Source: Bugula neritina (taxonomy: Eukaryota; Animalia; Bryozoa). From it: a stretch of 64,000 bases of DNA. Below, piece by piece: positions 1-64,000 of the stretch (the first letter of the stretch is position 1; every line of letters begins with the position of its first letter). The position numbers and the translations under genes were made by a program. The stretch covers positions 6,477,751 to 6,541,750 of the forward strand of contig OZ037773.1 of NCBI GenBank assembly GCA_964035545.1, read 5' to 3'. The notes under the pieces are model-generated. The model did no database searches and was not told the DNA's origin. It was given only the letters and a program-made list of their open reading frames with translations.

Positions 1-2
1 AC

Positions 3-60
3 GATACAATGTCCAACGCAACTCTTGGGGTAGCGGGGCTTTCTGGAAAACGTTTCCCAT
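3..60 (-). CDS. NCS-0: exon 1 of an NCS-family EF-hand gene that continues off the left edge (MGNVFQKAPLPQELRWTLY)
   Basis: ATG at 60-58 and GT donor at 2-1. The 58-nt phase-1 exon is nearly identical to exon 1 of NCS-C (15347-15404). Confidence 0.85.
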   Translation of the reverse strand, partial: MGNVFQKAPLPQELRWTLY

Positions 61-401
61 ATTTTAGAAACTCCTGGCCAAAAACTTTGAACAAAAAATT
101 TAAGTTGAACTTTTATTTTTATAGCTTTTAGACCGTTTGCAATTTTAGAAGCAAACCTCGCAGGTATGTTACTGCTAGGGACAAGCTCTCCACTGAATTA
201 ATTTTTTTATTCATGTTGGAAGCTTTTTCCAAAAAATTTCAATGCTGTAAATATCAAGCTAGTTTTAATAAAAAGAAAAACCAAGCCTTCTGTTACAAAA
301 GCTTGTTATCCCAGTTTAAAAAAAACTTGAAGGATATATGCAATTAATGTGAATCTGATGCTTGTATAGTTCTGTATAACCTGTAGTGAAATATACTGAA
401 G

Positions 402-3400
402 ATGGGGAATTTCCTGCCATGCACTGGGAGAGTAAGGCCAAGTTCAAGAACACTCCACCCATGGTCCTACGCCTGTAAGTAATATATACCCGTTAGCTTT
501 TTTTTTCTAACTTGCAATACAAATCAAATTCATATTGCAATTTGCTGTTGCAAATATTTTTCTTAGCGATGTACAGGTAAATTTATTTATATCATGGCTG
601 ATTGAAACATCCGAAACTAAAGGAGACAGAAAATGTGTTTTTAAGTTTTTGCTAAGGCAAGCTCAAACATTATTTCAATTTGCTGGATCAAAGTTAAAAC
701 CAAAATATTGATTTAATTTATCTATCACTAAATCAAAGTACCATCAATGAGTTCAAGCTTTAGCTGAGATTTTACAACAAAATTTAACTTCGATTCCCCC
801 TCTTTACCAAAACCGCAGCTTATTTAAGCAATATAGGTAATCGTTAGTGATCAGGTAGCTTTAAATTCTATGTCATCACCCGCCATCACCTTTCATCACC
901 TTTCATCACCTGTCTTCACTTGTCATCATCTGTCATCACCTGTCATCATATGGCATCATATGTCATCTCATGTGTTGACATGTGACATCTACAGTCATAA
1001 ATCATCACCTGTCAACACCTGCCATTACATGTCATCATATGTCATCACAGGTGTCATGTGTTTTTATAAGCCGTAATTAGTATTGGCATGTGTTGACATG
1101 TGACATATACTGTCACATGCTGGTCACATGTATTCACATGTCGCATTATACGATATGAAGATGCTTTCTCTAAATGTCCACATTAGAAATATTATATTAA
1201 TAGTATTGGCCCAGCTGTATACCTGCATGAATCTAACTCCTTTTTCATGGCTGAAATAATATATATTTTTATAATAACTTTGTTCTTGCAATCATTTGAT
1301 ATATTTTGTAGTCACTGAAGCCGAAAAGAGCATGTGGTATGTTTTTAAGCTAATTCTTTTTTAAACTTGATAGAAGATTAAAAGTCTTATATTTTGATTA
1401 AAGCATTTTAAAAAAAGCATAGTAAATATGTGATTTTATTAAGATTGTGTGTGCCACTTATTCAGTTTTGGGTAATATTAGTACGTACAGTACAGTATAT
1501 ATTGTATCATTTGTGAAATATATATGTAATGCTCATCTGCATGTAGCAGTTATTTCTTCAGTACATATAGACTACAGTTGTAAAAACTCTATTTCTGCTA
1601 TCCATATGTGAGCATTAATTTGTAGACTTGATTTTATTAGTCTGCTATGTTTGCAGAACATTAAGATCAGGGTCTAGCATTATTTTTTTAAATTTGGTGG
1701 TACATTTTATATAGAAAGTTATCATTATTTATAGGATTTGAATGGTACCTATTTAAAACATTATGAGCAAGCCGCTCACATTGCTGATAATGTAAGAGTG
1801 TTATTTCACTAACGGATGGCTATAGCAATGACTGTGTTGAACTTCTGAATATATAGCCTTAGAATCTCAATAGAAAATTATGCTATTTCAGGTATTCCTA
1901 CTTCAAACTACACTCCAACTTTAGAAATAGACTGACAAAAGATGTAAGTAGATCTTATCACATCCTCTTGTTTTATTAATATTTGATCATAATTTCTCTT
2001 CCAACCATTTTAGCATAATATAGTGAATAATTTAGTTTGTAAGTTGCAACGCAATATAATTTTAAACAGTTTATTCTTATACAGTTTATATAAAGTTAAT
2101 TCATACTTGCACTTCTACTCAAATTCTACAAAATTATATACAAATTATATGTGTATAATTACTTTAATTAAATAGATACCATTTTAAGTACAAAATTGTG
2201 ACCACATTCTCAAAAAACATTCAGAATGAAGCTGAAAATAGGTTACTAATTTCAAGTTTAAAAATTATAATTTTATTGCAGTTTATAAAATCGGTCTACC
2301 TGTATTTCTATCCAAATGGCAATGGGAAAGAGTTCACCAATTATCTATTCGAGTTGTTTGATTGTGATTGTGATGGATTCATAACCTATAATGACTTCAT
2401 GCAGGCACTTCATAGTCTTACAAAGAGCTCTACAGAAACTTTGATTGCAAGTAAGTACAAAACATATGTGTAGAGACACAAATAGATCTAACGCATATTG
2501 ATAGCAGAATTGAAGATGTGAGATATAAAATGGCATTTTCAAACAGAAAATAATATATTACAATTTTGCCTAACACAAAAGTATATTGTTTAATTTATAT
2601 AAACACAAACTTTATATTATGAGAATAACAGGTATATATATGTTCAAATTATTAATATCAAAAGAGCTTTGTTTTTATAAATAAAAGAGTTATCCGTGCC
2701 AACGCCAAAAAGAAGCTCAACAGCAAAACACAATCTTGTTTACTTTATCTATCAAATAAAAACAGGGATTAAGTGTTTTGCAGAAGATCAGAATTTGTAT
2801 GTTAATTTTTCTCTCTTTGTTTTATCCTCTTTATTCAGCCTGATGACTATTTTGATCTATACTTCATTTTGTGACAACTCCACTCATTTCCTATACTCTT
2901 TGTAAACTAAATGCTATATACTAAGATTAATAAAATCCAACGGTATTCATATTATGAAAGTTTGTGTATGAAGCGACAACTTTACTGTACTTATCCTTAA
3001 TAACACAAGTATTTGTCTCTCTAACCAGTCTTCTGATGCTTTCAGATTACTTTCTGTTGTGTGACATCAACTCTGAAGGTGTTGTGACAAAATCAGACAT
3101 AAAGAACGTACTCAACTCTGTTTATAAGTTAGTAGGGCCCGAGCTGACTGAAGACATGGAATCAGCTGATTCAAGGGTGGAGAGAGCATTTCCTGCCATA
3201 GACAGAGTAAGGGACACATTTATATAGTCAGAACTCTTTGTACCCTCAGAAAGCTTAAAGTTTATTAGTTTCAACAAAACTTTTACTTGTTTTTAAAATT
3301 TGTTAGCAAGGTGACAAAAAATATATTAAAAGCAACTATATAAATACTAGAATGCAATTTTTAACTTTGCAAAATTATTATATAGTACTATTATTATTCA

Positions 3401-3975
3401 TTGGGCATATTTTGATTCATCTATAACTTAAGATTAATTTTTTTGTAACACAGATGCTTAGGCTCTGGTAATATAAACCTACGTCTTTTAGAAAACAGCC
3501 TTAACATATTTTTTGTTAAATTAGAAGAAATATGAAGATATAAAAATAATCAACATTGCATTGAAAAATTATTGAAATACTTTTTCAATTAGTTTCTATT
3601 TGCCACTAGAGATTTGTCATCATTAAGATTGACAATGCAAAGCTTTTAGCAAGAAATAATTATTTTCTATTAAATAAATTTTTTAGTTGCCAACTACCTA
3701 CAAATTATATCACAGAAAATTGCTTTTTAATTTAATATATTTATTCATGAAGGTGTTTTACATACATTTTAATTGCTTTTATATTAATTTTGTTTTAGGA
3801 AAATAAAGGATTTGTAGATGTGGAAGACGTAGTGCGTGACTGTATTGGTTCGAGTTGGATCAGGAAAGCTTTGGCTGTTAGATTTATCCAGTATTTAGTA
3901 GAAGTTCTCCTGTTAACTATTTCTGATGAACATCATGATATAATTAAGGACAACATATTATTGCTATATGTTTAG
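402..3975 (+). CDS. NCS-A: divergent NCS-1-like EF-hand protein, about 218 aa, 6 exons
   Basis: Exons 402-474, 1312-1336, 1892-1943, 2282-2450, 3046-3206, 3799-3975, all GT-AG, total 657 nt in frame. Protein MGNFLPC...FTEAEKSMW...YPNGNGKEFTNYLFELF. EF loops DCDCDGFITYND, DINSEGVVTKSD, DRENKGFVDVED. Confidence 0.88.
870..1145. repeat. Degenerate TGTCATCACC/CATGT-type minisatellite in NCS-A intron 1
   Basis: Recurrent tcatcacc/tgtcat units; explains the spurious ORF 870-1076. Confidence 0.7.
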
Positions 3976-5429: not shown

Positions 5430-8400
5430 ATGGGAAACAAAAGTAGTGGAAATTACAGATTAAGAAGCTGTAAGTGTTATAAAACTTTGACAACATATAC
5501 TATACATATATAATCTGTTTATAGAAATTTTTATTGATTAAATATCACTTTACCAAAAAAAGTTTAAATTAATAATTAATAATACATTTAGAAAAAAGCT
5601 AAAACGTATTATATTTAGCTATCTTTGTTTGAGTGTCTTATACAGAAAAAAAATAAAAAAATATGTCTCCTATCAGTTTATAGATGATGACACAAAATGT
5701 ATGAATTTTTCCAACTTAAATTGTTGTAAACTCAGATGGTTTGGACGAATCTTGGTCTTCTCGAGCTATCCAATGGAGAGCTGGATCTGATGAAAATTTT
5801 CTGCTAGCCGACGACCTAGAAGGAGATGAAGAAGAGGTAACTCCAGAGTTTGATCCTAGTGAAAGATCGATAGTACTGAGAGATTCTGAGCAAACAGAAA
5901 GCAGTGGAAGAAAAGCAGCTGCAGCAGAAGCAACTCGATTGAGAGTAATGAGTGAGTTTGTGACTGTTGTTCAAGTTGAGTATAGTTTACACATTAAGTA
6001 CATACTAAGTACACACTGAATACACACTGAGTATACACTGAGTGCATATTGAGTGCATACTGAGTACTTACTGAGTGCATACTGAGTACATACTAAGTAC
6101 ATAATGAGTGCATACTAAGTATATGTCAAGTACGTACTGAGTAAATACTGAGTACACACTGAGTACGTATTGAGAACGCATACGGAGTATATACTGAGTA
6201 CATACTGAGTACATACTGAGTACAATTTGTTGTAGGCTCAGCTAGTTTGGAAGATTTTTGGCCTCCTCAGGGTATCGAACAGCGAACTGGCTCTGATGGA
6301 AATCTGTTAGCCGACAACGCGAAAGAAGGTGAAGGAGAGGTAACTCCAGAATTTGAAAGATCGGTTGTACGGAGAGATTCTGAGCAAACAGGCAGCAGTA
6401 GAAGAAAAGCAGCTGCAGCAGATTCTACTCGATTGAGAGGGATAAGTAAGTTTGTAACTGTTGCTCAATTTAAGTAGTTTACATTAAGTACATACTAAGT
6501 ATACACATTGAATACACAATGAGTACTTACTGAATACACACTGAATACACACTGAGTACACACTGAGTGCATACTGAGTACACACTGAGTACATACTGAG
6601 TACATACTGAGTACATACTGAGTACATACTAAGTACATACTGAGTACATACTGAGTACATACTGAGTACAATTTGTTGTAGGCTCAGCTAGTTTGGAATT
6701 TTCTTGGCCTCCTCAGGGTATCGAACAGCGAACTGGCCCTGATGGAAATCTGTTAGCCGACAACGACAACGCGGAAGAAGGTGAAGGAGAGGTGTCTCTA
6801 GAATTTGAAAGATCGGTTGTACGAAGAGATTCTGAGCAAACAGGTAACAGTGGAAGGGAAGCAGCTGCAGCAGAAACAACGCAATGGAGAGTAATGAGTG
6901 AGTTTATGAATGTTTTTCAATTTGAGTCGTTTACACATTAAGTACACACCGAGTACATGATGAGTACAAATTGAGTATTTACTCAGTAAGCCTAGGGTCG
7001 CATGACACAGAGTTCTCGCACAGACAGACATGGGCGGGAAACTTCGTCTAGTCCAAAAATGCTCTGTTGTGTGCAGATTTTAAAAGGATTTCATGTGGAT
7101 AGAGTGCTGAACAGACGGTAAGGAAAGCTTGTGCAAATTTGATCTAACTGATTGATTGGCTGGCACACTTTTTGAGTTTCAATTCAAGCTTTTAATTTTT
7201 AGCAGGCTGTATTGAAACGTTTTTTTAATAGTTATCGAAAAGCAGATGGCTTTGCTAAACAAAAAAAAAACCGGTAGGTGAGCAGTAAAATTTAATGCAA
7301 TCATACTTAGTCAAAAAATTTTCACACCTGCAGATATAATGCACTGTGTGTAGTAGTTCATTCCAAAAACAGCTTTTCACTCATTTGTACCTGTATGCAT
7401 TGTATGTGGCCTTACGATTATGAAAACATATTGGCATGTATACAGTTTATATTCAACTTAACATGAATTTGTCAATGCACAATTAAATACATATAATTGA
7501 AAATCTGGCTTAAAATTGTGTGTGCATAATTGAAGTAATTTATTCAGCAAATCAAGTGAATTTTGTATTTTTATTTTTACAGTTTCCCAAGAGTTGAGAC
7601 ATGAGTTGTAAGTATTGTTGCTTGCAGTTGTTTATTGTCAGTTATTGTTAACAAAAATGTATCAGCTTTTAGATAGGTAGAAAAATTGTACAACTTTACA
7701 ACATGTCTCAAATTGCAACTACTAAGAAATTGGTAAAACTGCATTTTATCCTGCTTAAATTTCCAAGTTCTTTTTTAGGTTTACTAGTTTTGATTTTTAC
7801 ACGGAGCACAAAGGAAAACTGAAAAAAAATGTAAGTAAACTTTCTTATGTGTCTAATATACTTTTACTTGTTTGCAGTTTATTTTTTGATGATGGATTTT
7901 TAGCTAGAGCGTTCTAATCAAAAAACATCTTTTTTAAAATTATTAACAATTTATGAAATATGTAAAAACATTCAAAAATCTTTTGTAAAAGAACACTGTA
8001 GCAAGTAGCAACAGTATCTTATATCACTGATGAGAGAATTTATACCTATATTGCTTATCTTATGCAAGTCAAGAATGGTTTGAACCCACAGGAATTTTCT
8101 CAAAACAATTATATCTCGCAAAATGCGGCAATTGAATAGACTTCACAACTTTAAAAAAGAACTTATGCTTTGCTTTCTTAAAATTATTTCTTATAAAATT
8201 ACTGCATAAAATGTTTTTATCAAAGTTCACAAAGTATTTTAAGATGGTCAAATAAATTATGCTACAAACTGCTATTTGTAGAAGATTGCTCAAATTTACA
8301 GGAGATATTACCCAGAGGGCAGCCCCGAAAAGTTTTCTAAATATTTTCACAGAATGCTTGATATTGACAACAAAGGCTTTGTCAGCTTCAATGATTATAT

Positions 8401-9975
8401 AGAGCGTATGGTTACAATAAATCACGGTACATTTCTTCAGAAGAATCGCTGTGAGTAGAACACACATTAGCTTTCTATAATCTTATATCATAAAAACTCA
8501 CACATTTTTATAGTCGCCATTCCTGTGAGAACCCCTAATAGAAAGAGTTTTTTGTTAAATCGGGCTAAGGACTTATTCAGATGGGGCACAGGTGCAATTA
8601 TGACTGGATGCTCTTCCTAAAATCACCAATAGCCTTTGTCGGGTTCGAGCCCATGACTCCGTGTTTACTAGACAAACGCTCTAACCCCTAGACTACAGCT
8701 GCTCCCTATAAGCTATCTATAATAACCTTATAGCGAACTTGAAATTAGCATCAACACTCATGTTAATTCTATTTTGATTTCTGTTAACAGAACATAGACT
8801 GGTGCTTGCATCAAACAACCATTAAATTAATATATCAATTGTTTCATTGAAATTGAAAAATGACTTCATCTATAAATAAATAGAATGCATAGCGATTTAT
8901 AATTGGCAATGACTAAATTTGAGAATAAAGTGTAAAATAGAGCTTATTTAATGTATCAATTAATTCAAATAGTATATTTTTACAGGTTTTAAAAACATAA
9001 ACAAATTATTATTATATTGAATAAAAATATATGGCGATTCAGGCACGTAATTTAGCACATGTTCATTTTTGTGCAGCGTTCATTTGTTGAGTCAGACATA
9101 TATGCCCTTTCAACCTTTACAACTGGACAATAGGCTATTTTTTAATAATTGTGACTGTTTGTTCTTTAGAGGTGTTTTAAATTTTAGTAAGATTCTTACT
9201 GTATGATGTGGATAGAGATGGTAGAGTATCAATGCAAGATATGGAGAAGTTTCTAACATCTCTTTACAAGCTGGTTGGTCCAGCATTAGCGGCAGGCCTG
9301 GAACCACCTGCTTCAAGAGTAGAAAACATGTTTTCTAACTGGAAGCTTGTAAGAACTAAAACATTACATCTTGTCAGAATGTGATGTTTTCAATTCTGTT
9401 TTATAGTAAATATTTTTGCAAACTAGATTAATCCACAAAAATCTCCGCGTTCCAGTTGATTATTTTCTTTAAAACTGCAGCACTATACATTTTAATTAAA
9501 AACTTAAAAAAAATTTGGAGCAAAGTTTTTCAATGCAGCTGGTTTAACATATTATTATTTATATAGATTTAATACTTTTACCACAATTGGTTTTTGAAAT
9601 TAAATTATTAGTGATATTTATAGCTTGCAAAATGCTTTATAAGAAATATGTCTTCGACTCTTGACATTATAGAAGCAGTTCACCTTTTTACTTGTACTTG
9701 TTTCTATATAGGCCATCTCTTTTGTGTAAACAATTTAGTTGTTCAGCATAATTATTCTCACTATATTATCAATTCACAAAACTTTGCAGTGTAATGTTTT
9801 ATTTCAGGCTGGCACGTCACATCTCTACCTGGAGGACTTCACATTTGGATCTGTCTCAATTTGGGCTAACGATCTCGCAACAGCTTTTATTACCCATCTC
9901 ATTGATGTCGTTTTCAAATTCTTTTGTAATAGTGTTGATGAGCGACTCAAAAATGATATAACACACCTGAAATAA
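5430..9975 (+). CDS. NCS-B: divergent NCS-family protein with three tandem copies of an extra acidic N-terminal exon, up to about 418 aa
   Basis: Exons 5430-5469, 5736-5951, 6236-6445, 6682-6897, 7583-7607, 7779-7830, 8282-8450, 9188-9348, 9808-9975, total 1257 nt in frame. Starts MGNKSS. EF2 DIDNKGFVSFND, EF3 DVDRDGRVSMQD, EF4 degenerate. Confidence 0.82.
5990..6225. repeat. 11-bp minisatellite (ACTGAGTACAY)n
   Basis: Tandem actgagtacat/actgagtacac units filling the intron between cassette exons 1 and 2 of NCS-B. Confidence 0.9.
6481..6670. repeat. 11-bp minisatellite (ACTGAGTACAY)n
   Basis: Same unit, between cassette exons 2 and 3 of NCS-B. Confidence 0.9.
8511..8707 (-). mobile_element. 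tRNA-derived SINE, family 1
   Basis: Reverse complement of 4253-4473 (ctggatgctcttcctaa...ctaacccctagac). Confidence 0.85.
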
Positions 9976-10832: not shown

Positions 10833-11354
10833 TGCATGCAGAACAATTTGAAGAAAAATGGTTTTCTAATAGTTCATAATTAGTGCTATTAATTTCATTT
10901 TTTATTCATAAATATAATTTTTTTGGCAGAAAATTTAATTGGGCATTGAGCTAAACTAGATTTTATGTTAAAAATATCAAACGTTTATTCCTAAAACATA
11001 TCTGATTAACAAAATAACATATCTTTACACATTGCATAGATAAAATTAAAAAAAAAGTAAAATATTAGTGTGTAATATTTATATTGCTATCTTAAAAAAT
11101 TAATAACCTTACCTTAGTAGAAAGACTGGTGTTGAATTACTATAGATAAAACAGTTTAAATAATTTATCTAGAATATTTAAAAGTAGACTTTTAATTTTT
11201 TAAGTGTTCTGGTAGTAAAATAGATAAATTGTTTATTTTATACAGCTATATAGCTTCATACCCTTTCAGTCAAACACCGTGTAAAAATTTAAAATGCTGA
11301 AATTGGGAAATTGCTGCAAGTATTCTATTTCAAAATAATTTATTTTTATAACAG

Positions 11355-11461
11355 GCAATTGAGACTGCTATTAGAAGAGTGTATCCAAATGGTGATCCAG
11401 AACAATATGCTCTCTACCTCTTCAGTGCTATGGATATGGACAACGATAACTTCATCTCATT
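11355..11461 (+). pseudogene. Truncated copy of NCS-E exon 4 (AIETAIRRVYPNGDPEQYALYLFSAMDMDNDNFIS) with its upstream intron
   Basis: Near-identical to 24214-24320. The preceding ~11030-11354 resembles ~23930-24213. Similarity stops mid-exon and no other exons are present. Confidence 0.85.
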
Positions 11462-11957
11462 TATTTATCCACTAACATTTTCTTAGCAGTAGTTACATGG
11501 TTAAAGTCGTGATTGGTGCAGTTGTGCTAGTTAAAATTAAGGTTTGTCTGTTTGTGCAACGTAGCAAAACTATTATCTTTGTCAACTCTAATTTTTTTTA
11601 AATATGCATATATTTATATATTTTATCAACTCAAAATAATTACAAATTTTTATCCTGGAATTTCCAAAGTTTGGAGAGTTTATTCAATCTAGCTAACAAA
11701 ATAGCACGATATTTTGATGGGTAAGTCCTGTATTTTCATATGACTGTGATCGCTAAAATGACTCTGTTTTATAGATTATTATATTTGCAAACTTTTATTG
11801 CCAGTGATAACAAAAATAGCATACACAAGTATTTTGACCTACATTTGCATATAACATGATAAATAACACTCAAGCAATTAACAGAATTTAAATTGTTTTG
11901 GTTGCCTTGAAGTAAGTTTTATGTACGATAACCACACATAAATTAGGAGCAGCTATT

Positions 11958-12293
11958 TTACATGTCATCTATGCTATCTTCATCAACTTGAGTTGGCAGC
12001 TCGAGGTGTATAATCCTATAGTCTCCCATGTTGATCGAAGTGACGAGGCTACGAGCCAAGGACTGACAAATCCATCTGTGAAACTTTAAGCTGAACTCAA
12101 ACTCCTCGACTGTAACATAACCCTTCTTTTCCTATAAACAGAAAAATATTGTTTTTAAGTATGAAAAGTAAACTTCCTATAAAAAATGCTTCTTGTTTCG
12201 TACAGGCTATTGGAAACATCACTGACACACTTCATTTATGCAATTTTAAAGTATTATTATATATATATATATTTATATACATATATATATATA

Positions 12294-12344
<51 letters not shown>

Positions 12345-12653: not shown

Positions 12654-12706
<53 letters not shown>

Positions 12707-38513: not shown

Positions 38514-42748
<4,235 letters not shown>

Positions 42749-49392: not shown

Positions 49393-49401
49393 ATATATAT
49401 A

Positions 49402-49476: not shown

Positions 49477-49480
<4 letters not shown>

Positions 49481-50485: not shown

Positions 50486-53400
50486 TCAGAATGTGAAGTT
50501 TTGTCCTAAAATAATGCAAAGCATTTACAATTATTGCCAGCATTCAATTTTCAGAGAGCGAAAAAGTTTGTTTAAGTAATGCTTAAGAGGTATGTGCAGT
50601 AATGAAGAAATTGAAAAAAGCCTGTTTTATAAATTAAAAATGTAGCAAAACAAGTTATGTTCTCACAAAACCCAAGAGCCCCAGACCAAAAGTTATAAAG
50701 AAATTTAAAGAACTTAGGCCATTTCAATTTCTCCTTAAGTAATTACTTACTGGTATAATCACGAGGGTCTGGGAGTCCAGATGTTAACTTCAACATCAAA
50801 GTATCTACCATCCATTCTTCCATTCTGATGCCCCACACAAAGTCCGTATAGTCCAAGTAACCACGGTTACGCTAGAATATAACAGTTGCATGTAGCATTA
50901 TCTGTGTAATGGCTAACATTATTACCAAGAAGCTAATAGTATTATTGCACAATATTGTTTCAATTATATACCAAGTTTTTAATAGCTTCAACAAACTTAA
51001 TAGCTAAGGACATAAATTGCACTACCTATATTAGCAATGAGCTTAAATTATTCAATTATCTGTTTATTTATGTATTTCTGCATCAGATTGGTAATTAATA
51101 AGCTAGTAGCACAAAGATTGTAAGAAAGTAAAAATTAAAACTTAACTGACATGCATTTCAGTATTTTCAGAAATTTTAAATGTTAATTTTTACGAGCTAT
51201 TCATAGTATATTTTTTACAAAAAATTACTCATCTGTGTAAAAGACAAATAGTTTTTTATAGCATTGTTTCTAGTAATTAGTTACTAATTACTAATTACTA
51301 GTTATTAGTTACTAGTTACTAGTTAACTCACTGCATCTAATATAGAAAATATGCTGTCAGTTCGAGTGGCTGGAGTATCATTTGCATCAGTCAATGATTT
51401 CCCAAGCAACTCATAGGATGCCCGAAGTACTTTCCTCATATCTGATTTTGAGACAGCGTTAACTTTACTGATGTCGAAGATTTTAAATGCCCCTAAAATG
51501 CAATAAACAAATCGTATATAACAAAAATAGAATAGATTTTGTGACTTATAATTTAATTTGAAAACTGTGCACACCATAGTTTTCTTTATAAAAAATGATG
51601 ACTACATCTTGGCAATATGTAAGCTTTTAGGAAAAAAACTCGCTTTACTGGTTTTCTCTAGATACTTGATACTTTATCTAGATACTTGAAGTGTACAAAA
51701 CAAACAAACAAACAACTTGTATACAACTATAAAGTAACAACTATGTATACTTTTGCATAGAATAAGTGAGTGTGTATATACAATTAATAAACACACTATG
51801 CATGTTGGTCATTATACAATTTTAACTCAAACATATGAAATCTAAACCCAAAGCCAATAGAAAAAGAGTTTTGGCAATAATTATTAAAAAGCAAAAACCG
51901 GCATATTATAAGCTATTACAGATGGTTGAGTATAAACAACGAATTATAAGTTGTGAAATCCTGTCCTTACATCTCAACTGATCAAACGGCTCTCCTGTCT
52001 CAGCACTCATACTTGTGAGAAACTTCCCAAACCCCATCTTTCCAAATGGCATAACACCGGCAGCGTTGAAGTATAACTTCACGTATCTGGTGGGGTCGCC
52101 ATTTTCATACCTTGTCTTTAAGTGGGATCTAAAAGCCTGTACAAAACAATATCACAGCTGAAGATTAATGCACATGTTTGCAAATCAAATGTTTTATATG
52201 CAGTTTAATGCATCAGTTGCATTATGGTTCTACAATTTTATTCAATTTGACAGGCATTAAATGCTATACTATTATAAAAATAGTCTATAATGATGTGTAA
52301 TGATTTTATGATGTATACGACTTTTTTATTATAAGATTTTCTTTTCCTTCTTTTCGCTTTGAGATGATAACTATCTCTCAATATGATTTTATGGTTTGAA
52401 GGAGTAGTAGAGAAGCCAGTGGAGTTCAGAAAACTGGGTAGGATGTAGTGTTGAGTTAACCCAGCAGCCTCTGTGGTGCAATTGGTTAGTGCGCCTGCTT
52501 GCAAGCCGGAGGTCTGTGGTTCGAATCTCGGTGGGGGAAAAATTATTTTACAAGCTATTTAGGCCTATAGTAAAATGTAGTAGTACTCCGAGAACCAGAG
52601 GAGCCTGAAAACTGAGAGAGTAGTAGAGAGGCCAGTGGAGTTCTTGAGAAGTGGGTGGAATGGAGTGCTGCATTTACCCAGCAGCCCCCGTGGTGTAATG
52701 GTTAGCACACTTGCTAGTCGAGGTCCCGAGTTATAATATAAGTTGGGGCAAAACTTTTACAGATGCTATTATTCTAAAATTTCAATCAATTATATGAGTT
52801 GGTGATTAAGCTTATAAATTACCAGAAATTTAAAATATGACCCAATTTTCAATGTAAAAACTTTAATTATTACACATTATCATTTCGGTAAAGTTTACTG
52901 CATACCACCAGCTACCGAAACTTGCCTTATATTTTATTCTCCAGAAAGCGTCTTCCCACCCCACAACATGTTAATAAGAAACTTAACTACCATTTATGTA
53001 TATTTTATAAATTTTGATTTGGAAAGAAATGTTCTTCCAATTAATTGAGGTACTCACTTCTCTGGTGATATATCCAGATGGAAATTTCTCCATAAAAAAG
53101 TCATACCTAAAACAAAAGAGCCGGTTGCATTACTTGTCAGTATTTATAATGTCTTATAAATGAAAGTTGGTTTTATTGCATGTTTCATTTAAAAAAAGTT
53201 AACAGACCCAAAAGTTTAAATTATAACAGCTGCATGCAGTCATACTCGCAACACACAAAATCAAAGTGTTATATTGCAAGCTGGTATATGCTCTTTAGTT
53301 ATCACCTTCACTTTCATTAGTCTGAAAATTTTAAAATTAGGAGTTTAGTTTGAAAATTTGAAAAGTGCATATCATGCTTAGACATTGGTTGTTTAAAAGA

Positions 53401-54314
53401 AATTTGAACAATAAAATTGACAATGTTTAAAAACATGCTGCAAATAATAAACTTAGAAGTGGAACTCACAATTCAATTAAAAATTTCATAATTTTTTTAT
53501 AAAGTTGGTATTTTACAGAAATAATTAGTAAATGCAAGTAATTTGAAGTTTTAAATGATATGATTAAAGAGCTTTGATAAATAACATAATATTTAAGTAA
53601 TGTTGCTGCTTAGCGGAATAGTGACTCACCATTCTATAATTTCACGGTCTGTATCTGTAAACAAAAAATTAATTTATACAGTGAAATACAATTCATATAA
53701 TGATATAATACAATCATTTATTATAACAGAATCGAAAAACACATTCGAATAGACACTTTATATTTCGAAAATTTGCAGCTTAAACACAGTTGTTAAAATT
53801 GTAAAGCATTGCAATATCAAAAGCCTTAACCAAGACTTCTATTAATTTTCTATATAGGAGTTTTGATTTGGATGCTAAATAAAAGTACAATGAGAAAAAT
53901 TTGGTAATGGAATAAGTCATTGCTCACTGATATTGCTGCTGCAACTGAAGCATCTTTAAAAAAGCGGTAATTTTTTAGCAGAAACTGGAGCTTACAGTTC
54001 ATCAGAATTAATCAGTAAGAATAACTGTTATTTCTCTGATGTATGTACACTCTGTTCAATGATTTGACAATGAAAAAATTCAGTTATAACTGTTAATTAG
54101 TAGAGAATAGGTACTTACATGAGGTTAGCAGCTCTAGCTTTCTGATTTTCTCATCAGGAAGAGTTGTCATACCTCTGTTGGTACGACTGCTTCTACTTAC
54201 TCGGCTACTTCTGCTGAAACTGCTGCTTGTACTGCTTCTAAACCTTGCTCTGCTTGTAAAACTGCTGCTGCCACTGCCACTTTGACCTCTACTTTGACTG
54301 CCTAAATTTCCCAT
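50486..54314 (-). CDS. NCS-J: paralog of NCS-I, about 245 aa, 7 exons
   Basis: Exons 54314-54119, 53654-53630, 53106-53058, 52136-51971, 51492-51332, 50871-50751, 50505-50486, total 738 nt in frame. Starts MGNLGS and ends RQNFTF*. Confidence 0.86.
50587..50734 (+). mobile_element. MITE family 2 with TTAA target duplication (Kolobok-like termini)
   Basis: TTAA-GAGG...CTCC-TTAA. The homologous introns of NCS-K and NCS-L lack the element. Confidence 0.78.
52400..52770 (+). other. Two tandem copies of tRNA-like repeat family 3 in NCS-J intron 3
   Basis: Unit gtagtagagaagccagtggagttc...acccagcagcc plus tRNA-like body (TGGTGCAATTGGTTAG, GGTTCGAATC) at ~52467-52540, with a decayed second body at ~52684-52750. 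Confidence 0.65.
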
Positions 54315-55581: not shown

Positions 55582-58234
55582 TTAGAATCTGAAGTTGTGT
55601 CCTAAAATAATTTAAAGCATGTACAATAATTGCGACCATTTAAATATATGATAACGAAAAAGTAATGCTTCAAGTATTTACTTACTGACAAAATCGCGGG
55701 GGTTTAATTGTCTGTTAGATATCGTCAACATCATAGCCTCAAGCATACAGTCTTCCATTCTGATACCTTCCACAAAGTCTGTATAGTCCAAGTAACCACG
55801 GTTACGCTAGAATATAACAATTGTGCATTGTCTGTATAATGCCCAACATTATTAACAAGAAGTTACAAACATTAATGCACATTGTTTAGATTATATACCA
55901 AGTTTTTTAAAAGTTTCAACAAACTTACCAATAACCCACATAAACATCCACTAATTCCGTAATTGGCTAAACTCATTCTTATTTAATAAACTAATAACAG
56001 AGACTTTAGACAGGTAAAAACTAAAACTTAATTGAAGTTCACATCAGTATTTTCAGAAATGCTAAATATTAATTTCTACAAAAAATTATGCATCTGTTAA
56101 AAAACCGACAGTTGCTTAGCATTGTTCCTATAACTAGCTACTAGTCACCAGTTAGGTACTACTTAACTTACGGTATCTATTGCACCAAATACTCTGTCAG
56201 TTCGAGTGGCTGGAGAATCGCTTTCATCAGTCAATGATTTCCCATGCAACTCAAAGAAGGCTCGAAGTACCTTTCTCATATCTGATTTTGTGACGGCGTT
56301 AGCTTTACTAATGTCAAAGATTTTGAATGCCCCTAAAATGCAATAAACTAACAGGATAACAAAAATAGAGTTTTTGAGTTCAACAGAAGCCACAGTTGTA
56401 AATTTGAAAATTATGTACACCATTTGTAAACGTGCATACTACTTTTGAGTGGGAGAAGAAGGTATGTATATACAATAAACACACTTTGTATGTTGCACAT
56501 TATAAAATTCCATTTGTATATACATGCATGCTTTCGCACGGGATAAAAGAGTATGTATATACAATAAACACACTTCGCACGTTGTTCATTATACAATTTC
56601 AGCTCAAATATATGAGATCTAGAAGCAAAGCCAATAGAAAAAGAATTTTGGCAATAATTATTGGGCAGCAAATATCACACCATATTAGCTCTTGCTTATT
56701 GCCAATTATGAACAGTGAAATATAAGTTGTGAAGTCCTGCCCTTACATCTCAATTGATTCAAAGGTCCTCCTGTCTCCGCACTTACACATGTAAGATACT
56801 TTACAAAGCCCATCTTTCCAAATGGCCTAACACCGGCAGCATTGAAGTATAGGTTCACGTATCTAGTGGGGTCACCATTTTCATATGTTATTTTTAATTG
56901 GGATACAAAAACCTGTACAGAAGAAACATCACAACCATGTATGTTTTATTTTTCTAAAAATTACTTCTCCCCTCACAAAATGTTAATAAATAAATTACAA
57001 TTTATATGCATATTTTGTATAAATTTTGATTTAATAAATTTTTTTTCTAATTAATACTTGAGATACTCACTTCTCTGGTGACATATCCAGATGGAAACCT
57101 CTCAAGAAAAAAGTTATACCTAAAACAAAATAGCCGGTAGTAATACTTGTCAGTACTTAGGTTTTACAAGCTTTAGCAAGTTATTTTTACACTTTTTTGT
57201 TTTAAAAATTGTACCAACACTAAACTCAAAATTTTGCTAACTGCAAGCATTTGCAGTTCATAAAATCAAAGTGTTATGTTATAAGTTAGTTTGCTCTTTA
57301 GTTTGTGACCTTCACCTTCATTAACCTGTAAATTTTAAAACTAAAAGGAGTTTAGTTTGAAAATTTGAAAAGTGCATATCACGTTTAGACATTGCTTAGG
57401 TATCTAAAAGAAATTTAAAAAATAAAAATTACAATATTTGGAACATGCTGCAAATAATCAATTTATAGTGGAGCTCATAAACTCTTGAAAGTTTTCATAA
57501 AATATTGTAAAATTCAAAATTTAAAGAAATGGTAAGTAAATGGAAGTAAATTTAGATTTTACATGCTACGATTCAACAAGTTTGATCAATAAAAATATTT
57601 AATCGCTTTTGGGTGACTCACCAGTGTATAATTTCTATGCAGTTATCTGTAAAAAAAAATTGTTTTATACATTAGAAGAATTACAGCTGCAAGTTGTTAC
57701 AGTAAAATACAATTCAGAGAAAGATATAATATAATCATTTACTACAGCAGAAGTGCAAAAAACACAACTCAAATAAAGACTACTTATATCTCAAAAACTT
57801 GCAGTTTTGACACAGTTATTGAAATATAGAACATTGCAATATTAAAAGTCTTAACCACGACTTCTATTCATTCTTCTATAAGAGGTTTGATTTGGATGCT
57901 AAATGACAGTACAATGAGAATGGTATGTTAATGGAATAAGTCCTTACTCACTGATATTGCTGCTGCAACTGAAGCATCTTTAAAAGAAAGCAGTGAATTT
58001 TTTATAGAAACTTGAGCTTACAGTTCATCAGAAACAATTAACCAGAGTGACTTTACCTTTCCAATGAGCAGTCTGCTAATGCCTTGAAGGTGAAAAAATT
58101 TAACTATAACTGTTAGTGGAGAGTGAGTACTTACACCGAGTTCGATTCACTAACTTTATGATTTTCTTGGAGGAGAGAGTTGGCGCACGTCTACCACCAC
58201 TTCGGCCTCTACTTTGACTGCCTAAATTTCCCAT
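55582..58234 (-). CDS. NCS-K: paralog of NCS-I/J with shortened N-terminus, about 213 aa, 7 exons
   Basis: Exons 58234-58135, 57646-57622, 57119-57071, 56912-56747, 56332-56172, 55806-55686, 55601-55582, total 642 nt in frame. Ends RHNFRF*. Confidence 0.86.
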
Positions 58235-59498: not shown

Positions 59499-62400
59499 CT
59501 AGAATTGAAATCTTAAGTTTCGTCCTAAAATAATGTAAAGCATGTACAATAATTGCCACCATTCAATTATTGATAACGAAAAAGAATGCTTAAGTAATGC
59601 TTAAAGTATTTATTTACTATCAGTATAATCGCGAAGGTTTACTCGTCTCCTAGGTATCTCCAACAACATAGTTTCAAGTATCCATGCATCCGTTCTAATA
59701 CCCTCCACAAAATCTGTATAGTCAAAGTAACCACGGTTACCCTAGAAGACAACAATTTTAGCATTATCTGCCTAATGCCTAATATTACTAATCAGAAACT
59801 AATAATTTTTATGCACAATATTGTTTAAATTACACCAAGTCTTTTAAGAGCTTCAACAAACTTAACCGTAAAGCACATAAAGATGTGCTACTTCAGAAAT
59901 GGTTTTAAACCAGTGTGTGAGTGGGTGAGTGGGTGAGTGTGTGAGTGTGTGAGTGTGTGAGTGTGTGAGTGTGTGAGTGTGTGAGTGTGTGAGTGTGTGA
60001 GTGTGTGAGTGTGTGTGTGTGAGTGTGTGAGTGTGTGAGTGTGTGAGTGTGTGTGTGTGAGTGTGTGAGTGTGTGAGTGTGTGAGTGTGTGAGTGTGTGA
60101 GTGTGTGAGTGTGTGAGTGTGTGAGTGTGTGAGTGTGTGAGTGTGTGAGTGTGTGTGTGTGAGTGTGTGAGTGTGTGAGTGTGTGAGTGTGTGTGTGTGA
60201 GTGTGTGAGTGTGTGAGTGTGTGAGTGTGTGAGTGTGTGAGTGTGTGAGTGTGTGAGTGTGTGAGTGTGTGAGTGTGTGAGTGTGTGAGTGTGTGAGTGT
60301 GTGAGTGTGAGTGTGTGAGTGTGTGAGTGTGTGAGTGTGTGAGTGTGTGAGTGTGTGAGTGTGTGAGTGTGTGAGTGTGTGAGTGTGTGAGTGTGTGAGT
60401 GTGTGAGTGTGTGTGTGTGTAGCTAGCTATTATAGGTACCAGGTACTACTTAACTTACTGCATCCAATATAGAAAATATATTGTTAGTTCGAGTGTCTGG
60501 AGTATCATATTGATTAGTCAATGGTTTCCCAAGCAACTCGTAGGATGCTCGAAGTACTTTCCTCATATCTGATTTTGTGACAGCATCGGCTTTACTGATA
60601 TCGAAGATTTTAAATGCCCCTAAAATGCAATAAACTAACAGGATAACAAAAGTAAAATGGAGTTTTTAAGCTCAACACAAACCACGTTTGTAAATTTGAA
60701 AACCACACACACCATGGTTTTCTTTATAGGAAAGGATAACTCTATTTTTACTGCAGAAAACTCTAAAAAAACTATAAGCCACATTTAAAAGCTTTACTGG
60801 TTTTCTCAAGATATTTGAGGTGTACAAGACAAACAAACAAACAATTTGTATACATGCATGCTTTTGCATGGGATAAAAGAGTACGTATATACAATAAACA
60901 CACTTTGCACGTTGTTCATTATAAAATTTCAGCTTAAATATATGAAATCTAGAAGCAAAGTCATTAGCAAAAGAATTTTAGTAATAATTTTTGGGCAGCA
61001 GATATCACACCATATTTGCTCTTGCTTATGGCTTGTTATGAACAGCAAAACATAAAACCAAAATACTAGCTATTACAGATGGTTGAGTATAAACAACAAA
61101 CTATAAGTTGTAATGGCCTGTCCTTACATTTCAACTGATCAATTAGCTCTCCTGTCTCAGCACTCATGCAAGTAAGGAACTTCCCAAAACCCATCTTTCC
61201 AAATGGCTTGACACCGGCAGCGTTGAAGTACAGTTTAGCGTATTTAGTAGGGTTGCCATTTGGATGCTTTATTTGCAAGTGAAATACAAAATCCTGTACA
61301 AAAGAAACATCACAGCCAAAAGATTGAAAGTTTCAATGCATCAGTTGCATTATAGTTCTACTTGTATATTAATTTAAACATAAAAATAGCCTACATTGAT
61401 GTGTAATTATTTAATGCTGTAGGGGTAAGGGTCATAGGGGTACAAAAAGCCGGCCAAATTGTGAAAGAACTTATTGACTTAGAGTTGTGATTTTTTTTTC
61501 ATAAAAAGATATTGACATAATTATTTAGCCTTTGTAGTTTCAACACTTGCGGAATATACGTGTTGAAAAGGCGAGTAAAAAACCATTTTTACCTAATTTT
61601 TGTAAATTTTTAAGGATGTCGTTAGAGCCTTATAACTTTTTACACTCAAAGGCAAGAAGCCTAGATTTTACTGATACTGTTGCTATTGCTTGTCTCTACA
61701 ATGCTTAACTAGTATAATAGCAAACACTGAAATAAATTTTCCTTGAGGCACATTTATTTTCAATTTGGCTACACGGGCACAATGGGCCACGCTGACCGGG
61801 GCACAATGGCCCACCTGATTATTGCACCCTGATCACTGTTATTAGTTTGTTTGCCCAAAAAATTGGTTGAAATGCTACTAAAATCTATAAGTACAGCCAT
61901 TTCTGACCTTTTTGTAAAATATCAAAGATATCATGGTAAGACTACAAAACTACAAGTTGAAGCTCCCCTAAGACATACATCTGGTGAGGTTAAAGCTTTA
62001 CCATTTTATACATAATACAAAACACTCTGCCGTTGCTACTAGCAGATAGTCATGATATCCATTATACATTATACCATTGAGGGAATATACATGCATTTGA
62101 CTAAAATAAGTTGTGATTTGCTCATTTGCTCCCCCTCTCCCTTCCGTACTCCAGTCATAAACCTCAGCCATGCATGCACCTTAGCTACAGTTCATTGAAA
62201 AAAGTTCACTCAGAATTTTGTAGTACATGTTAGTAAAGATTTTTTTTTAATAAACGTTGCTCTGAAGTGAAAATAACAAAACATTTTTAGTTTTAAACAG
62301 TAAAGATAATGGCACTGCAGAACCGAGTGACGTGCGTTTGATTTTGCCTTCCTCTGCTATCCGTAGTGGCACAAACTGTACAGCTAAAACAAGAATTTTG

Positions 62401-63880
62401 CTGTAGATCTGAAAGAGTATCTTTATTTATTTGTAATATTAAATAAATAAAGATCAGATGTAAGAAAATACGCAAAATTTCAATATATTTGTTGTGTCCC
62501 ACCCGGTACCGGGGTACAATGGGCCAATTTTTTTGTCATGAAAATTTCATTATTCTGAAAGTTGTGAGAGAGATAGAAACAACAAACTGGTACCTGTAAT
62601 AGACAACAGATGTAGCATTAAGACTAGAAATTATTGAACTAGTAACTTGAAAAACAGACGAATGAGAGCAACAAATACAAAATTCGGCCCGTTGTGCCCC
62701 TGTTACCCCTATCTGATTTTCCTTTCATCATAAAATTTTCTTTTTCTTAATGCTTTGAGATGATGATAAATATCTCCAAATATTAGATGGTATTAAAGTT
62801 GTTTAGTAATTATTCCAAGGGCAGGATTACTGAATTAGCATACCAATATATCAGTAGATATATAGCGAGTCATTTCTGGGTATCGCAATTTTAAGTTTAA
62901 ACATTTCTATTTGAGAAAATATGTTTTTTAAAGAGTGTTTTGCAGGAAGTAAATAAACATATAAATATTGTGCTTTAGAAGCATATGCAATAATATTTTA
63001 ATTAAATACAGCTGAATTAAAAATTTTAATGCTCTTATTTTACAACTTCAATGAAGTATATGAGTTGGTTATCAAAAATATAATTCAATTTTCAAAGTAC
63101 AACTTTATTTATTACGTAATAACATTATTTCGGTAATGTTTGCTGTATATATGTACTATCAGCTACCTACACTTGCCTTGTATTTTTATTTTTCTGAGAA
63201 TTATTTCTTGCTTAACAAAATGTTAATAAATAAATTGCAATTTATATGTATATTTTGTATAAATTTTGATTTGGGAAGAAATGGTTTTCTAATTATTTGA
63301 GGTACTCACTTCTCTAGTGATATATCCAGATGGAAATCTCTCAAGAAAAAAGCCATGCCTAAAACAAAGGAATCAGTAGTAACACTTGTCAGTGTTTAGG
63401 TTTTACAAGTTTTAGCAAGTTGTTTTTACACTTTTTTGTTTTAAAAATTGTACCAACACTAAACTCTAAATTTTACTAACTGCAATGATTTGCAGTTCAT
63501 AAAATCAAAGTGTTATGTTATAAGTTAGTTTGCTCTTTAGTTTGTGACCTTTGCATTCATTAACCTGTAACTTTAAAACTAATAGGAATTTAGTTTGAAA
63601 ATTTGAAAAGTGCATATCACGTTTAGACATTACTTATCTAAAAGAAATTTAAAAAACAAAAATTACAATATTTGGAACATGCTGCAAATAATCCATTTAT
63701 AGTGTAGCTCATAAACTCTTGAAAGTTCTTATATAATTTTATAAAATTTAAAATTTAAAGAAATAGTAAGTAAATGGAAGTAAATTTAGATTTTACATGC
63801 TACGATTCAACAAGTTTGATCAATAAAAATATTTAATCGCTTTTGGGTGACTCACCAGTGTATAATTTCTATGCAGTTAT
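59499..63880 (-). CDS. NCS-L: paralog of NCS-I/J/K, 5'-partial (exon 1 lies beyond the window)
   Basis: Exons 63880-63856, 63358-63310, 61293-61128, 60619-60459, 59741-59618, 59524-59499, open frame. Ends RRNLRFQF*. Confidence 0.84.
59913..60420. repeat. (GTGTGA)n hexanucleotide satellite, about 500 bp, in NCS-L intron 5
   Basis: Directly visible; absent from the paralogous introns. Confidence 0.95.
61422..62709. mobile_element. Non-autonomous DNA transposon, ~1.29 kb, with imperfect TIRs and TA target duplication
   Basis: TA-GGGGTAA...GGGGTACAA...GGCCAAATT at the left end and AATTCGGCCCGTTGTGCCCCTGTTACCCC-TA at the right. The flanks rejoin to match the empty site in NCS-J intron 3 (~52310). 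No transposase ORF. Confidence 0.8.
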
Positions 63881-64000
63881 CTGTAAAAAAAATTGTTTTA
63901 TACATTAGAAGAATTACAGCTGCAAGTTGTTACAGTAAAATACTATTCAGAGAGAGATATAATATAATCATTTACTACAGCAGAAGTGCAAAAAACACAA

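What the first reader, a model, noticed from the sequence alone, without database searches (positions are those of the whole stretch)
1..64000. Array of at least 13 myristoylated NCS-1-like genes around one canonical sensor
Seen: 13 loci plus 2 remnants share the same intron positions and phases, the cluster runs off both edges, and only the central NCS-F has CPSG and three canonical loops. Known: NCS-1/frequenin is normally low-copy and very conserved. Inference: a lineage-specific radiation of fast-evolving but intact paralogs, forming a diversified set of membrane-targeted EF-hand adaptors or modulators. I do not recall a comparable NCS cluster.
Basis: partly seen in the sequence, partly recalled or inferred. 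Interest (0 to 1): 0.9.

Follow-up and report, generated by a model that had tools for sequence, protein, structure and literature searches.

The report
Tandem NCS-1-like gene cluster in a bryozoan
A bugulid bryozoan carries, at one chromosomal site, 13 intact copies of a calcium-sensor gene that is normally nearly single-copy; 12 copies have lost the standard calcium-binding loops, and the seven that could be compared with a sister species are still kept by selection.

Summary
The window holds 12 six-exon NCS-like genes (A-L). A 13th intact gene (M) and exon 1 of L lie just past the right edge. At the left edge sits a decayed copy (Z), and there are two exon remnants.

- **Structure:** All genes share five GT-AG introns with identical phases, including a 25-nt micro-exon. 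All 13 proteins start Met-Gly.
- **Calcium loops:** Only F has CPSG and three canonical EF-hand loops.
- **Identity of F:** F is the orthologue of the protein annotated 'ncs1' in Bugula neritina (99.5% identical), and its best solved-structure matches are NCS-1/frequenin.
- **Selection:** Against Bugula orthologues about 15% diverged in non-coding DNA, exon lengths, splice sites and reading frames are kept. dN/dS is 0.009 for F and 0.12-0.32 for the seven paralogues testable. Z shows what decay looks like here.
- **Distribution:** A profile of the paralogues finds such exons nowhere else in this 216-Mb genome. Among 1.84 billion representative proteins, only Bugula fragments resemble them.
- **Origin:** The nearest named relatives are NCS-1, with KChIP close on one exon. 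The tree is compatible with one local radiation, but branches are long and the reference set is narrow.
- **Not shown:** No RNA data were available. Expression, myristoylation and calcium independence are untested.

Verdict: a real, apparently undescribed lineage-specific expansion, a new variant of a known family. The scan also noted M and the terminal mini-exon in other windows.

The parts
3..60 (-). Z exon 1. It belongs to a decayed C-like copy whose exons 2-4 lie in the left flank (L001). Z is a pseudogene.
   Evidence: The exon 1 peptide is 95% identical to that of C. The flank copy has a 1-nt insertion in exon 3. Its exon 4 has a lost AG acceptor, an in-frame TAA and a 1-nt deletion. Exons 5 and 6 are absent.
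402..3975 (+). Gene A, 218 aa, 6 exons (402-474, 1312-1336, 1892-1943, 2282-2450, 3046-3206, 3799-3975).
   Evidence: Model. The last 53 residues are 100% identical in B. neritina. EF2 is near-canonical with Asp at loop position 12; the other loops are degenerate.
5430..9975 (+). Gene B, 204 aa, 6 exons. It is the sister of D and has a long divergent C-terminal exon.
   Evidence: Model. The orthologue in L005 keeps all exon lengths and splice sites; dN/dS 0.17.
11352..11462 (+). Remnant of an exon 4 like that of gene E, truncated.
   Evidence: tblastn gives 86% identity to residues 44-80 of E. No neighbouring exons were found.
11958..15404 (-). Gene C, 211 aa, 6 exons.
   Evidence: Model. The orthologue on JGI Bugula contig L007 has exons 2, 3 and 5 mapped at the same length and splice sites; over those exons dN/dS is 0.28.
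15758..15814 (+). Remnant of an exon 1 like that of gene A (starts Met-Glu instead of Met-Gly). It sits head-to-head with C, just as A sits with Z.
   Evidence: tblastn gives 79% identity to residues 1-19 of A. The same spacing and orientation as the Z/A pair suggests a duplicated block (inference).
17255..20933 (+). Gene D, 204 aa, 6 exons, paralogue of B (65% aa identity).
   Evidence: For B versus D, dS is 0.80 and dN/dS 0.26.
22331..25606 (+). Gene E, 212 aa, 6 exons.
   Evidence: The orthologue in L005 is intact; dN/dS 0.14.
26280..30951 (+). Gene F, 195 aa. It is the conserved NCS-1/frequenin-like copy, with CPSG and three canonical EF loops. Exons: 26280-26346, 27757-27781, 28219-28267, 29326-29494, 30479-30639, 30835-30951.
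   Evidence: It is 99.5% identical to 'ncs1 [Bugula neritina]' P0001. Best solved-structure hits are NCS-1 at 210 bits, against neurocalcin at 180. dN/dS 0.009.
34439..37225 (+). Gene G, 202 aa, 6 exons. All four loops are degenerate.
   Evidence: The orthologue in L005 is intact; dN/dS 0.32. It is partly annotated in B. neritina as hypothetical protein KAF6022343.1.
38514..42748 (-). Gene H, 202 aa, 6 exons.
   Evidence: Exons 2-6 of the L005 orthologue are intact; dN/dS 0.25.
44597..49123 (-). Gene I, 242 aa as modelled with 6 exons. It has a Ser/Arg-rich N-terminal extension. A candidate 7th mini-exon at about 44616-44597 would use a donor at 44771/44770.
   Evidence: The orthologue on L008 has intact exons 4-6; dN/dS 0.145. 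The mini-exon peptide, its stop and its acceptor are conserved in L008, with one synonymous change.
50486..54314 (-). Gene J, 241 aa, 6 exons, plus a candidate mini-exon at about 50505-50486.
   Evidence: The orthologue on L009 has intact exons 4-5; dN/dS 0.12. Mini-exon candidate.
55582..58234 (-). Gene K, 209 aa, 6 exons, plus a candidate mini-exon at about 55601-55582.
59499..63880 (-). Gene L, exons 2-6, plus a candidate mini-exon at about 59524-59499. Exon 1 lies 368-467 nt beyond the window's end (L002).
   Evidence: The complete protein is about 210 aa. L and the next gene M (right flank) have dS 0.11 and genomic blocks 91-93% identical.

Best explanation
This is a lineage-specific tandem expansion of an NCS-1/frequenin-type gene in a bugulid bryozoan, a close relative of Bugula neritina.

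Thirteen intact genes lie within about 70 kb. One of them, F, keeps the ancestral calcium-sensor sequence under very strong constraint. The other twelve form three subgroups: A-E, G with I-M, and H. They keep the NCS length, the exon structure and the N-terminal Met-Gly. They have lost the CPxG motif and most calcium-ligand positions in their EF-hand loops.

The seven paralogues I could test (B, C, E, G, H, I, J) are under purifying selection that is 13-35 times weaker than on F.

The most likely mode of action is inferred, not shown. The paralogues fold like NCS-1 and are N-myristoylated and membrane-associated. They would act as calcium-insensitive or low-affinity partners for diversified targets, not as high-affinity calcium switches. 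The I-M subgroup adds a Ser/Arg-rich N-terminal extension, and probably a short basic-aromatic tail from an extra mini-exon.

The array keeps turning over: it contains a decayed copy (Z), exon remnants and a young pair (L/M).
For: **Gene models.** All models have identical intron phases and canonical splice sites.

**Orthologues.** Orthologues of A, B, E, F, G and H lie in the same order on B. neritina contig VXIV02002864.1. C, I and J have orthologues on JGI Bugula contigs. Every exon that could be mapped keeps its length, splice sites and frame, although non-coding DNA is only about 80-87% identical.

**Selection.** Orthologue dN/dS: F 0.009, B 0.17, E 0.14, G 0.32, H 0.25, C 0.28, I 0.145, J 0.12. 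Paralogue pairs give 0.26-0.50. Z has frameshifts, a stop and a lost acceptor, which shows that unconstrained copies do decay here.

**Calcium loops.** Only F has canonical loops. Only one of eight paralogue exons scanned reaches a Pfam EF-hand gathering score.

**Distribution.** The paralogue exon-5 profile hits only this cluster in the 216-Mb genome, followed by F and then N3. Among 1.84 billion representatives, only Bugula fragments are paralogue-like.

**Origin.** The best full-length outside hits are NCS-1 from vertebrates, fungi and insects. The solved-structure ranking for exon 5 is NCS-1 57-62 bits, hippocalcin 50, KChIP 40-45. In the tree the 12 paralogues sit on one side of a branch (SH-aLRT 86), and a clade of the cluster plus the bryozoan F orthologues is not rejected (p-AU 0.82).
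Against: - No RNA run holds the region, so transcription and the exact splice forms are unverified.
- The tree has very long branches (H, G, A, C), and its outgroups are almost all NCS-1. Grouping of the paralogues could therefore be long-branch attraction.
- The exon-4 profile scores KChIP (77-81 bits) about as high as NCS-1 (71-83 bits).
- C and D are missing between B and E on the B. neritina contig. Either gene content differs between the species or that draft is incomplete.
- D, K, L, M and most of A have no orthologue comparison.
- Three proteins (A, C, H) lack the preferred small residue at position 6 for N-myristoyltransferase.
- Loss of calcium binding is read from loop residues only. 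Several loops are near-canonical with Asp at position 12 (EF2 of A; EF3 of B and D; EF2 and EF3 of E) and may still bind Ca2+ or Mg2+.
Confidence: 0.7

Rival explanations
1. The paralogues are an array of decaying pseudogenes, or neutrally drifting duplicates, around one working NCS-1 gene.
For: EF-hand loops are degenerate in all 12. Most exons fall below Pfam EF-hand thresholds. Most are not annotated in the B. neritina assembly. No RNA support is available. Real pseudogene material exists in the cluster (Z and two remnants).
Against: All 12 reading frames are intact and every splice site is canonical. Orthologues keep exon lengths and frames at about 15% neutral divergence. dN/dS is 0.12-0.32 in all seven testable genes, with pooled pN/pS of 0.24 for B, E, G and H. 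Z shows how quickly an unconstrained copy breaks.
Confidence: 0.05
2. The cluster is not a recent local radiation from NCS-1. It is an old set of distinct NCS subfamilies, for example KChIP-like or other classes, that happen to be linked and are simply unsampled in other animals.
For: Between-subgroup identity is only 16-33% and synonymous sites are saturated. The exon-4 profile scores KChIP as high as NCS-1. I-M have a variable N-terminal extension, as KChIPs do. The shared intron positions are ancestral to the family, because N3 has them too, so they do not date the duplications. Protein databases hold few bryozoan genomes.
Against: The exhaustive profile search found no paralogue-like protein outside Bugula. 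The exon-5 profile prefers NCS-1 over KChIP by 15-20 bits. The bryozoan F and Watersipora frequenin score higher against the paralogue profile than non-bryozoan NCS-1 do. The genome's other NCS gene on C2 lacks the exon 4/5 intron that all cluster genes share with F. Tandem arrangement and nested subgroups (B/D, I-M) fit serial local duplication.
Confidence: 0.2
3. The multiplicity is an assembly artefact, such as haplotigs or a mis-joined tandem repeat.
For: L and M share blocks 91-93% identical and some identical exons. C and D are absent from the corresponding place on the B. neritina contig.
Against: Apart from L/M, copies are 16-68% identical in protein, and their introns are mostly unalignable. 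An independent assembly of a sister species has A, B, E, F, G and H in the same order. Independent JGI contigs carry C, I and J.
Confidence: 0.03

Closest known systems
NCS-1 / frequenin (class A neuronal calcium sensors)
   Same: About 190-aa four-EF-hand protein with an N-terminal Met-Gly. F has CPSG in EF1 and canonical EF2-EF4. Its best solved-structure matches are NCS-1 and frequenin 2. The paralogue exon-5 profile also ranks NCS-1 first.
   Different: NCS-1 is described as one of the most conserved NCS subfamilies, with very low retention of duplicates (PMC2837045). Here there are 13 linked copies. Twelve lack CPxG and canonical loops and evolve 13-35 times faster than F. F itself is only about 55-59% identical to non-bryozoan NCS-1.
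Drosophila frq1/frq2 and zebrafish ncs1a/ncs1b duplicates
   Same: Tandem (Drosophila) or recent duplicates of the NCS-1 gene with the same exon structure, and rate acceleration in one copy after duplication (PMC2837045).
   Different: Those are two copies about 95% identical, both still canonical sensors. Here there are 13 copies down to 16% identity, with loss of the calcium-ligand pattern.
KChIPs (Kv channel-interacting proteins, class E NCS)
   Same: NCS fold with a variable N-terminal extension and some EF-hands that do not bind calcium (my own knowledge). The exon-4 profile scores KChIP as high as NCS-1. I-M have long N-terminal extensions.
   Different: KChIPs keep CPxG and functional EF3 and EF4 (my own knowledge). 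The paralogue exon-5 profile scores KChIP 15-20 bits below NCS-1. No orthology was shown.
The genome's own unlinked NCS gene N3 (contig C3)
   Same: Same five intron positions and exon sizes (25/49/169/161 nt). It starts Met-Gly, has a CPxG motif (CPKG), and by eye its EF2-EF4 loops look canonical; I did not run the loop scoring on N3.
   Different: It is single, unlinked and conserved in type. It scores only 47 bits against the paralogue profile, against 66-92 bits for cluster genes.

Membership tests
NCS (neuronal calcium sensor) family | About 190-200 aa protein alignable end to end with NCS proteins (four EF-hand motifs). | tested here: met
   All 13 align over their full length with F. 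Exon 4 and exon 5 profiles of the 11 paralogues hit NCS proteins in the PDB at E 1e-16 to 1e-23, and only NCS proteins lead the list.
NCS (neuronal calcium sensor) family | N-terminal myristoylation signal (Met-Gly, small residue at position 6). | tested here: inconclusive
   All 13 start Met-Gly, and 10 fit the PROSITE-type pattern. A, C and H have Pro, Gln or Phe at the critical position. The modification itself cannot be tested with these tools.
NCS (neuronal calcium sensor) family | Inactive EF1 carrying the Cys-Pro-x-Gly motif. | tested here: not met
   Only F has CPSG. G, H and I-M keep x-Pro-x-Gly (FPAG, NPSG, FPTG, FPSG). A-E have no trace.
NCS (neuronal calcium sensor) family | Two or three canonical calcium-binding loops among EF2-EF4. 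| tested here: not met
   F has 3 of 3 canonical loops. No paralogue has a fully canonical loop. Five loops are near-canonical with Asp at position 12 (EF2 of A; EF3 of B and D; EF2 and EF3 of E). G and I-M have none.
NCS-1 / frequenin subfamily (gene F only) | Closest to NCS-1 rather than to the neurocalcin/hippocalcin, KChIP, recoverin or GCAP classes. | tested here: met
   PDB scores for the F orthologue P0001: NCS-1 197-210 bits, neurocalcin/hippocalcin 178-180, KChIP 157-168, recoverin 138-147, GCAP 84-114. It is annotated ncs1 in B. neritina and frequenin-1-like in Watersipora.
NCS-1 / frequenin subfamily (the 12 paralogues) | Descent from the NCS-1 lineage (monophyly with F). | tested here: inconclusive
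   The exon-5 profile prefers NCS-1. The exon-4 profile ties NCS-1 with KChIP. In the tree a clade of the cluster plus F orthologues is not rejected (p-AU 0.82), but branches are long and the other NCS classes were not sampled.

The most novel reading that the evidence does not exclude
The twelve paralogues are a family of NCS-fold proteins that have given up calcium sensing. They would work as constitutively membrane-anchored (myristoylated) specificity subunits for different targets, such as channels, lipid kinases or receptors. That would be a sensor-to-adaptor transition repeated and diversified within one bryozoan lineage, with I-M gaining new N- and C-terminal targeting tails.
Probability: 0.3. 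Interest if true: 0.6.

Novelty: new variant of a known kind. Interest (0 to 1): 0.45.

Why it matters
NCS-1/frequenin is a textbook example of a slowly evolving gene that is almost never duplicated. Here a 13-gene array has one copy frozen (dN/dS 0.009). The other twelve have shed the CPxG motif and the calcium ligands, and the seven that could be tested stay under selection. This is a natural experiment on what an NCS scaffold can do without calcium sensing, and on how duplicates of a dosage-sensitive sensor escape loss. It also gives bryozoan biologists a set of largely unannotated, lineage-restricted signalling genes to look for in larval, neural or zooid-specific transcriptomes. It is still a gene-family expansion, a common kind of event, and has no functional data yet.

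Tried and rejected
**RNA support.** The look-up of sequencing runs found only one run, and it is not on record as RNA; it is probably the source sample. I did not use read laying because DNA contigs cannot show splicing.

**Word-based protein searches.** Searches with exon regions of F and I returned only one hit each: the B. neritina ncs1 protein and a 95-aa JGI fragment. The search with full-length P0001 returned only 7 proteins.

**Spliced proteins.** These have no reference form, so I sent no full-length paralogue to the structure, atlas or exact look-up tools. No fold was predicted.

**Exhaustive profile search.** Giant multi-EF-hand proteins topped the list through summed repeats. They were ignored as irrelevant.

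**Watersipora.** The 10-kb flanks around its frequenin-1-like gene show only a partial F-like duplicate and no divergent paralogues. The flanks are too short to judge synteny.

**'FLSQCPSG' at 43605-43582 (-).** This match had no supporting exons in the later search, so I treat it as chance.

**Literature.** Searches for an NCS cluster in Bugula or for NCS expansions found nothing specific. A mosquito paper reports only a broad 'neuronal calcium-binding protein' orthogroup change.

**Careful tree.** The careful tree search did not finish in time. The results come from the quick search.


Full report
**What is in the window**

The window is AT-rich (about 31% GC) and has no long prokaryote-style ORFs. 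Six-frame motif and tblastn searches, started from the one clearly canonical EF-hand gene, found repeated sets of NCS-like exons on both strands.

I rebuilt each gene exon by exon from splice sites and frames. The window holds twelve loci, A to L, each built from the same six exons:
- a first exon that starts Met-Gly and ends in a phase-1 donor, usually T|GTAAGT;
- a 25-nt micro-exon;
- an exon of 49 or 52 nt;
- an exon of 169 or 166 nt, carrying EF2;
- an exon of 161 nt (158 in H, 164 in G), carrying EF3;
- a terminal exon carrying EF4.

All introns are GT-AG, the phases are 1,2,0,1,0 throughout, and no frame is broken. Protein identity between most genes is only 16-38%. Two subgroups are closer: B/D at 65% and I-L at 52-68%.

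**Edges and debris**

The window is G000:C9:6477751-6541750 in a 216-Mb assembly. I fetched both flanks.

On the right lie exon 1 of L and one more intact gene, M. M shares identical exons 3 and 6 with L, and the L/M pair has dS 0.11.

On the left, the Met-Gly exon at window 60-3 belongs to Z, a copy of the 5' half of C. Z has a 1-nt insertion in exon 3. Its exon 4 has lost its AG acceptor and carries an in-frame TAA and a 1-nt deletion. Exons 5 and 6 are missing, so Z is a pseudogene.

Two exon remnants lie inside the window: one like exon 4 of E at 11352-11462, and one like exon 1 of A at 15758-15814. The second sits head-to-head with C exactly as A sits with Z, which points to a duplicated block (inference).

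The count is therefore 13 intact genes, one pseudogene and two remnants in about 70 kb.

**Which features are kept and which are lost**

Only F has the CPSG motif and three canonical 12-residue loops. None of the 12 paralogues modelled has a fully canonical loop. Five loops are near-canonical with Asp at position 12. G and I-L have lost nearly all ligand positions in EF2. Only one of the eight paralogue exons scanned reaches a Pfam EF-hand gathering score, whereas exon 5 of F does.

All 13 proteins begin Met-Gly, and 10 fit the PROSITE-type myristoylation pattern.

I-M carry a Ser/Arg-rich N-terminal extension. Downstream of their last exon there is a conserved acceptor followed by a tiny ORF encoding a basic F-x-F tail. 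In the Bugula orthologue of I this mini-exon is kept, with one synonymous change and a retained stop. It is therefore probably a real seventh exon, as another note of this scan proposed. RNA is needed to confirm it.

**Organism and identity of F**

Exon 4 of F retrieved 'ncs1 [Bugula neritina]' (P0001, 195 aa), which is 99.5% identical to my F model.

The B. neritina contig is only about 80-87% identical in non-coding DNA. The window therefore comes from a close relative, not from that assembly.

P0001 matches solved NCS-1/frequenin structures best: 197-210 bits, against 178-180 for neurocalcin/hippocalcin and less for KChIP, recoverin and GCAP. It is 65% identical to Watersipora 'frequenin-1-like' and about 55-59% identical to other NCS-1 proteins. 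F is thus an NCS-1-type gene, though a fairly divergent one.

**Are the paralogues alive?**

No RNA run was available, so I used comparative evidence instead.

The B. neritina contig carries A (3' end), B, E, F, G and H in the same order. For B, E, F and G every exon has the same length, canonical splice sites and an open frame; for H this holds for exons 2-6. Short JGI contigs that are evidently Bugula DNA carry C, I and J.

Nei-Gojobori dN/dS between orthologues:

| Gene | dN/dS | Source |
|---|---|---|
| F | 0.009 | |
| B | 0.17 | |
| E | 0.14 | |
| G | 0.32 | |
| H | 0.25 | |
| C | 0.28 | |
| I | 0.145 | |
| J | 0.12 | |

Pooled pN/pS for B, E, G and H is 0.24. Paralogue pairs give 0.26-0.50.

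These values, together with the visible decay of Z, argue that the paralogues are functional genes under relaxed but real constraint. D, K, L, M and most of A could not be compared with an orthologue.

C and D are absent between B and E on the B. neritina contig, yet a C orthologue exists on a separate JGI contig. So either gene order differs between the species or the draft is incomplete.

**Is it lineage-specific, and from what did it arise?**

A profile of the 11 paralogue exon-5 sequences, built without F, finds 13 exons in this cluster at 66-92 bits. The next hit is the unlinked gene N3 at 47 bits, and nothing else of note appears in the whole genome.

I ran the same profile exhaustively against 1.84 billion representative proteins. 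It gives 1607 hits at E <= 0.001. The only proteins closer to a paralogue than to F are short fragments 85-94% identical to A, B, G, I and J, plus one C-like fragment. All come from B. neritina or from small JGI contigs. The named full-length outside hits I looked up are NCS-1 proteins from vertebrates and fungi; an insect hit is annotated only as an EF-hand protein.

Against solved structures, the exon-5 profile ranks NCS-1/frequenin first (57-62 bits; yeast Frq1 51.6), then hippocalcin/neurocalcin (about 50), then KChIP and recoverin (about 40-45). The exon-4 profile ties NCS-1 (71-83 bits) with KChIP (77-81 bits).

A quick maximum-likelihood tree puts the 12 paralogues on one side of a branch (SH-aLRT 86). 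It does not reject a clade of the cluster plus the bryozoan F orthologues (p-AU 0.82).

There are caveats:
- H, G, A and C have very long branches.
- The reference set lacks the other NCS classes.
- The shared intron positions are ancestral, because N3 has them too.
- The genome's NCS-like gene on C2 lacks the exon 4/5 intron. This mildly links the cluster to the F/N3 type.

**Comparison with what is known**

[quoted passage not shown] Only Drosophila frq1/frq2 and zebrafish ncs1a/b were found (PMC2837045). I found no paper on an NCS cluster in Bugula or on comparable NCS-1 arrays.

The cluster is therefore unusual for this family. In kind, though, it is a tandem gene-family expansion followed by divergence.

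**Mechanism: shown versus inferred**

Shown:
- tandem duplication;
- conserved gene structure;
- intact frames in two lineages;
- purifying selection in the seven paralogues tested;
- loss of the canonical loop pattern;
- restriction to this locus and, as far as the databases reach, to Bugula.

Inferred:
- N-myristoylation and membrane association;
- weakened or absent calcium binding;
- diversified target binding;
- the extra C-terminal mini-exon in I-M.

**Verdict**

I file this as a new variant of a known kind, of moderate interest.

The scan had already noted gene M and the mini-exon in other windows. I met no human-like or restricted sequence.

Noticed in passing
window 44597-44616, 50486-50505, 55582-55601, 59499-59524 (- strand); same in M (L002): Conserved terminal mini-exon candidates in I-M. 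Each has a TTTTAG acceptor followed by a 6-8-residue basic tail ending F-x-F and a stop, reached from a phase-1 donor that overlaps the apparent stop of exon 6. In the Bugula orthologue of I the peptide and stop are kept, with one synonymous change.
   Followed up: partly
window 10058-24095 versus L005 5582-7593: The B. neritina contig goes from B straight to E. The 14 kb that here hold the exon-4 remnant, C, the A-like exon-1 remnant, D and the 5' part of E have no counterpart there, although a C orthologue exists on a separate JGI contig. This is either a structural difference between the species or a gap in the draft assembly.
   Followed up: partly
L002 1862-5821 and window 59607-63880: L and M have identical exon 3 and exon 6 peptides and genomic blocks 91-93% identical, while exon 5 is only 78% identical. 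This looks like a young duplication or patchy gene conversion.
   Followed up: partly
window 12415-12643: Another note of the scan proposes a type I hammerhead ribozyme here, in an intron of C. An Rfam scan of the whole window at gathering thresholds returned no family at all, so it is not confirmed at that stringency. I did not run the permissive search.
   Followed up: partly
L003 (G000:C3:15964000-15973999), - strand, 8751-4486: A complete, unlinked NCS gene (N3, 192 aa) with a CPKG motif and EF2-EF4 loops that look canonical by eye. It has the same five intron positions and exon sizes as the cluster genes, which shows the gene structure is ancestral.
   Followed up: yes
L006 3133-3689 (Watersipora subatra OY755162.1): About 12 kb upstream of the Watersipora frequenin-1-like gene lies a partial duplicate: exon 3 and part of exon 4, nearly identical in peptide. 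F-type genes therefore duplicate locally in another cheilostome too.
   Followed up: no
window 17649-18209 (-) and 33075-33479 (+): Two longer ORFs (187 and 135 aa), one in intron 1 of D and one between F and G, have no Pfam match. Their nature is unknown.
   Followed up: partly
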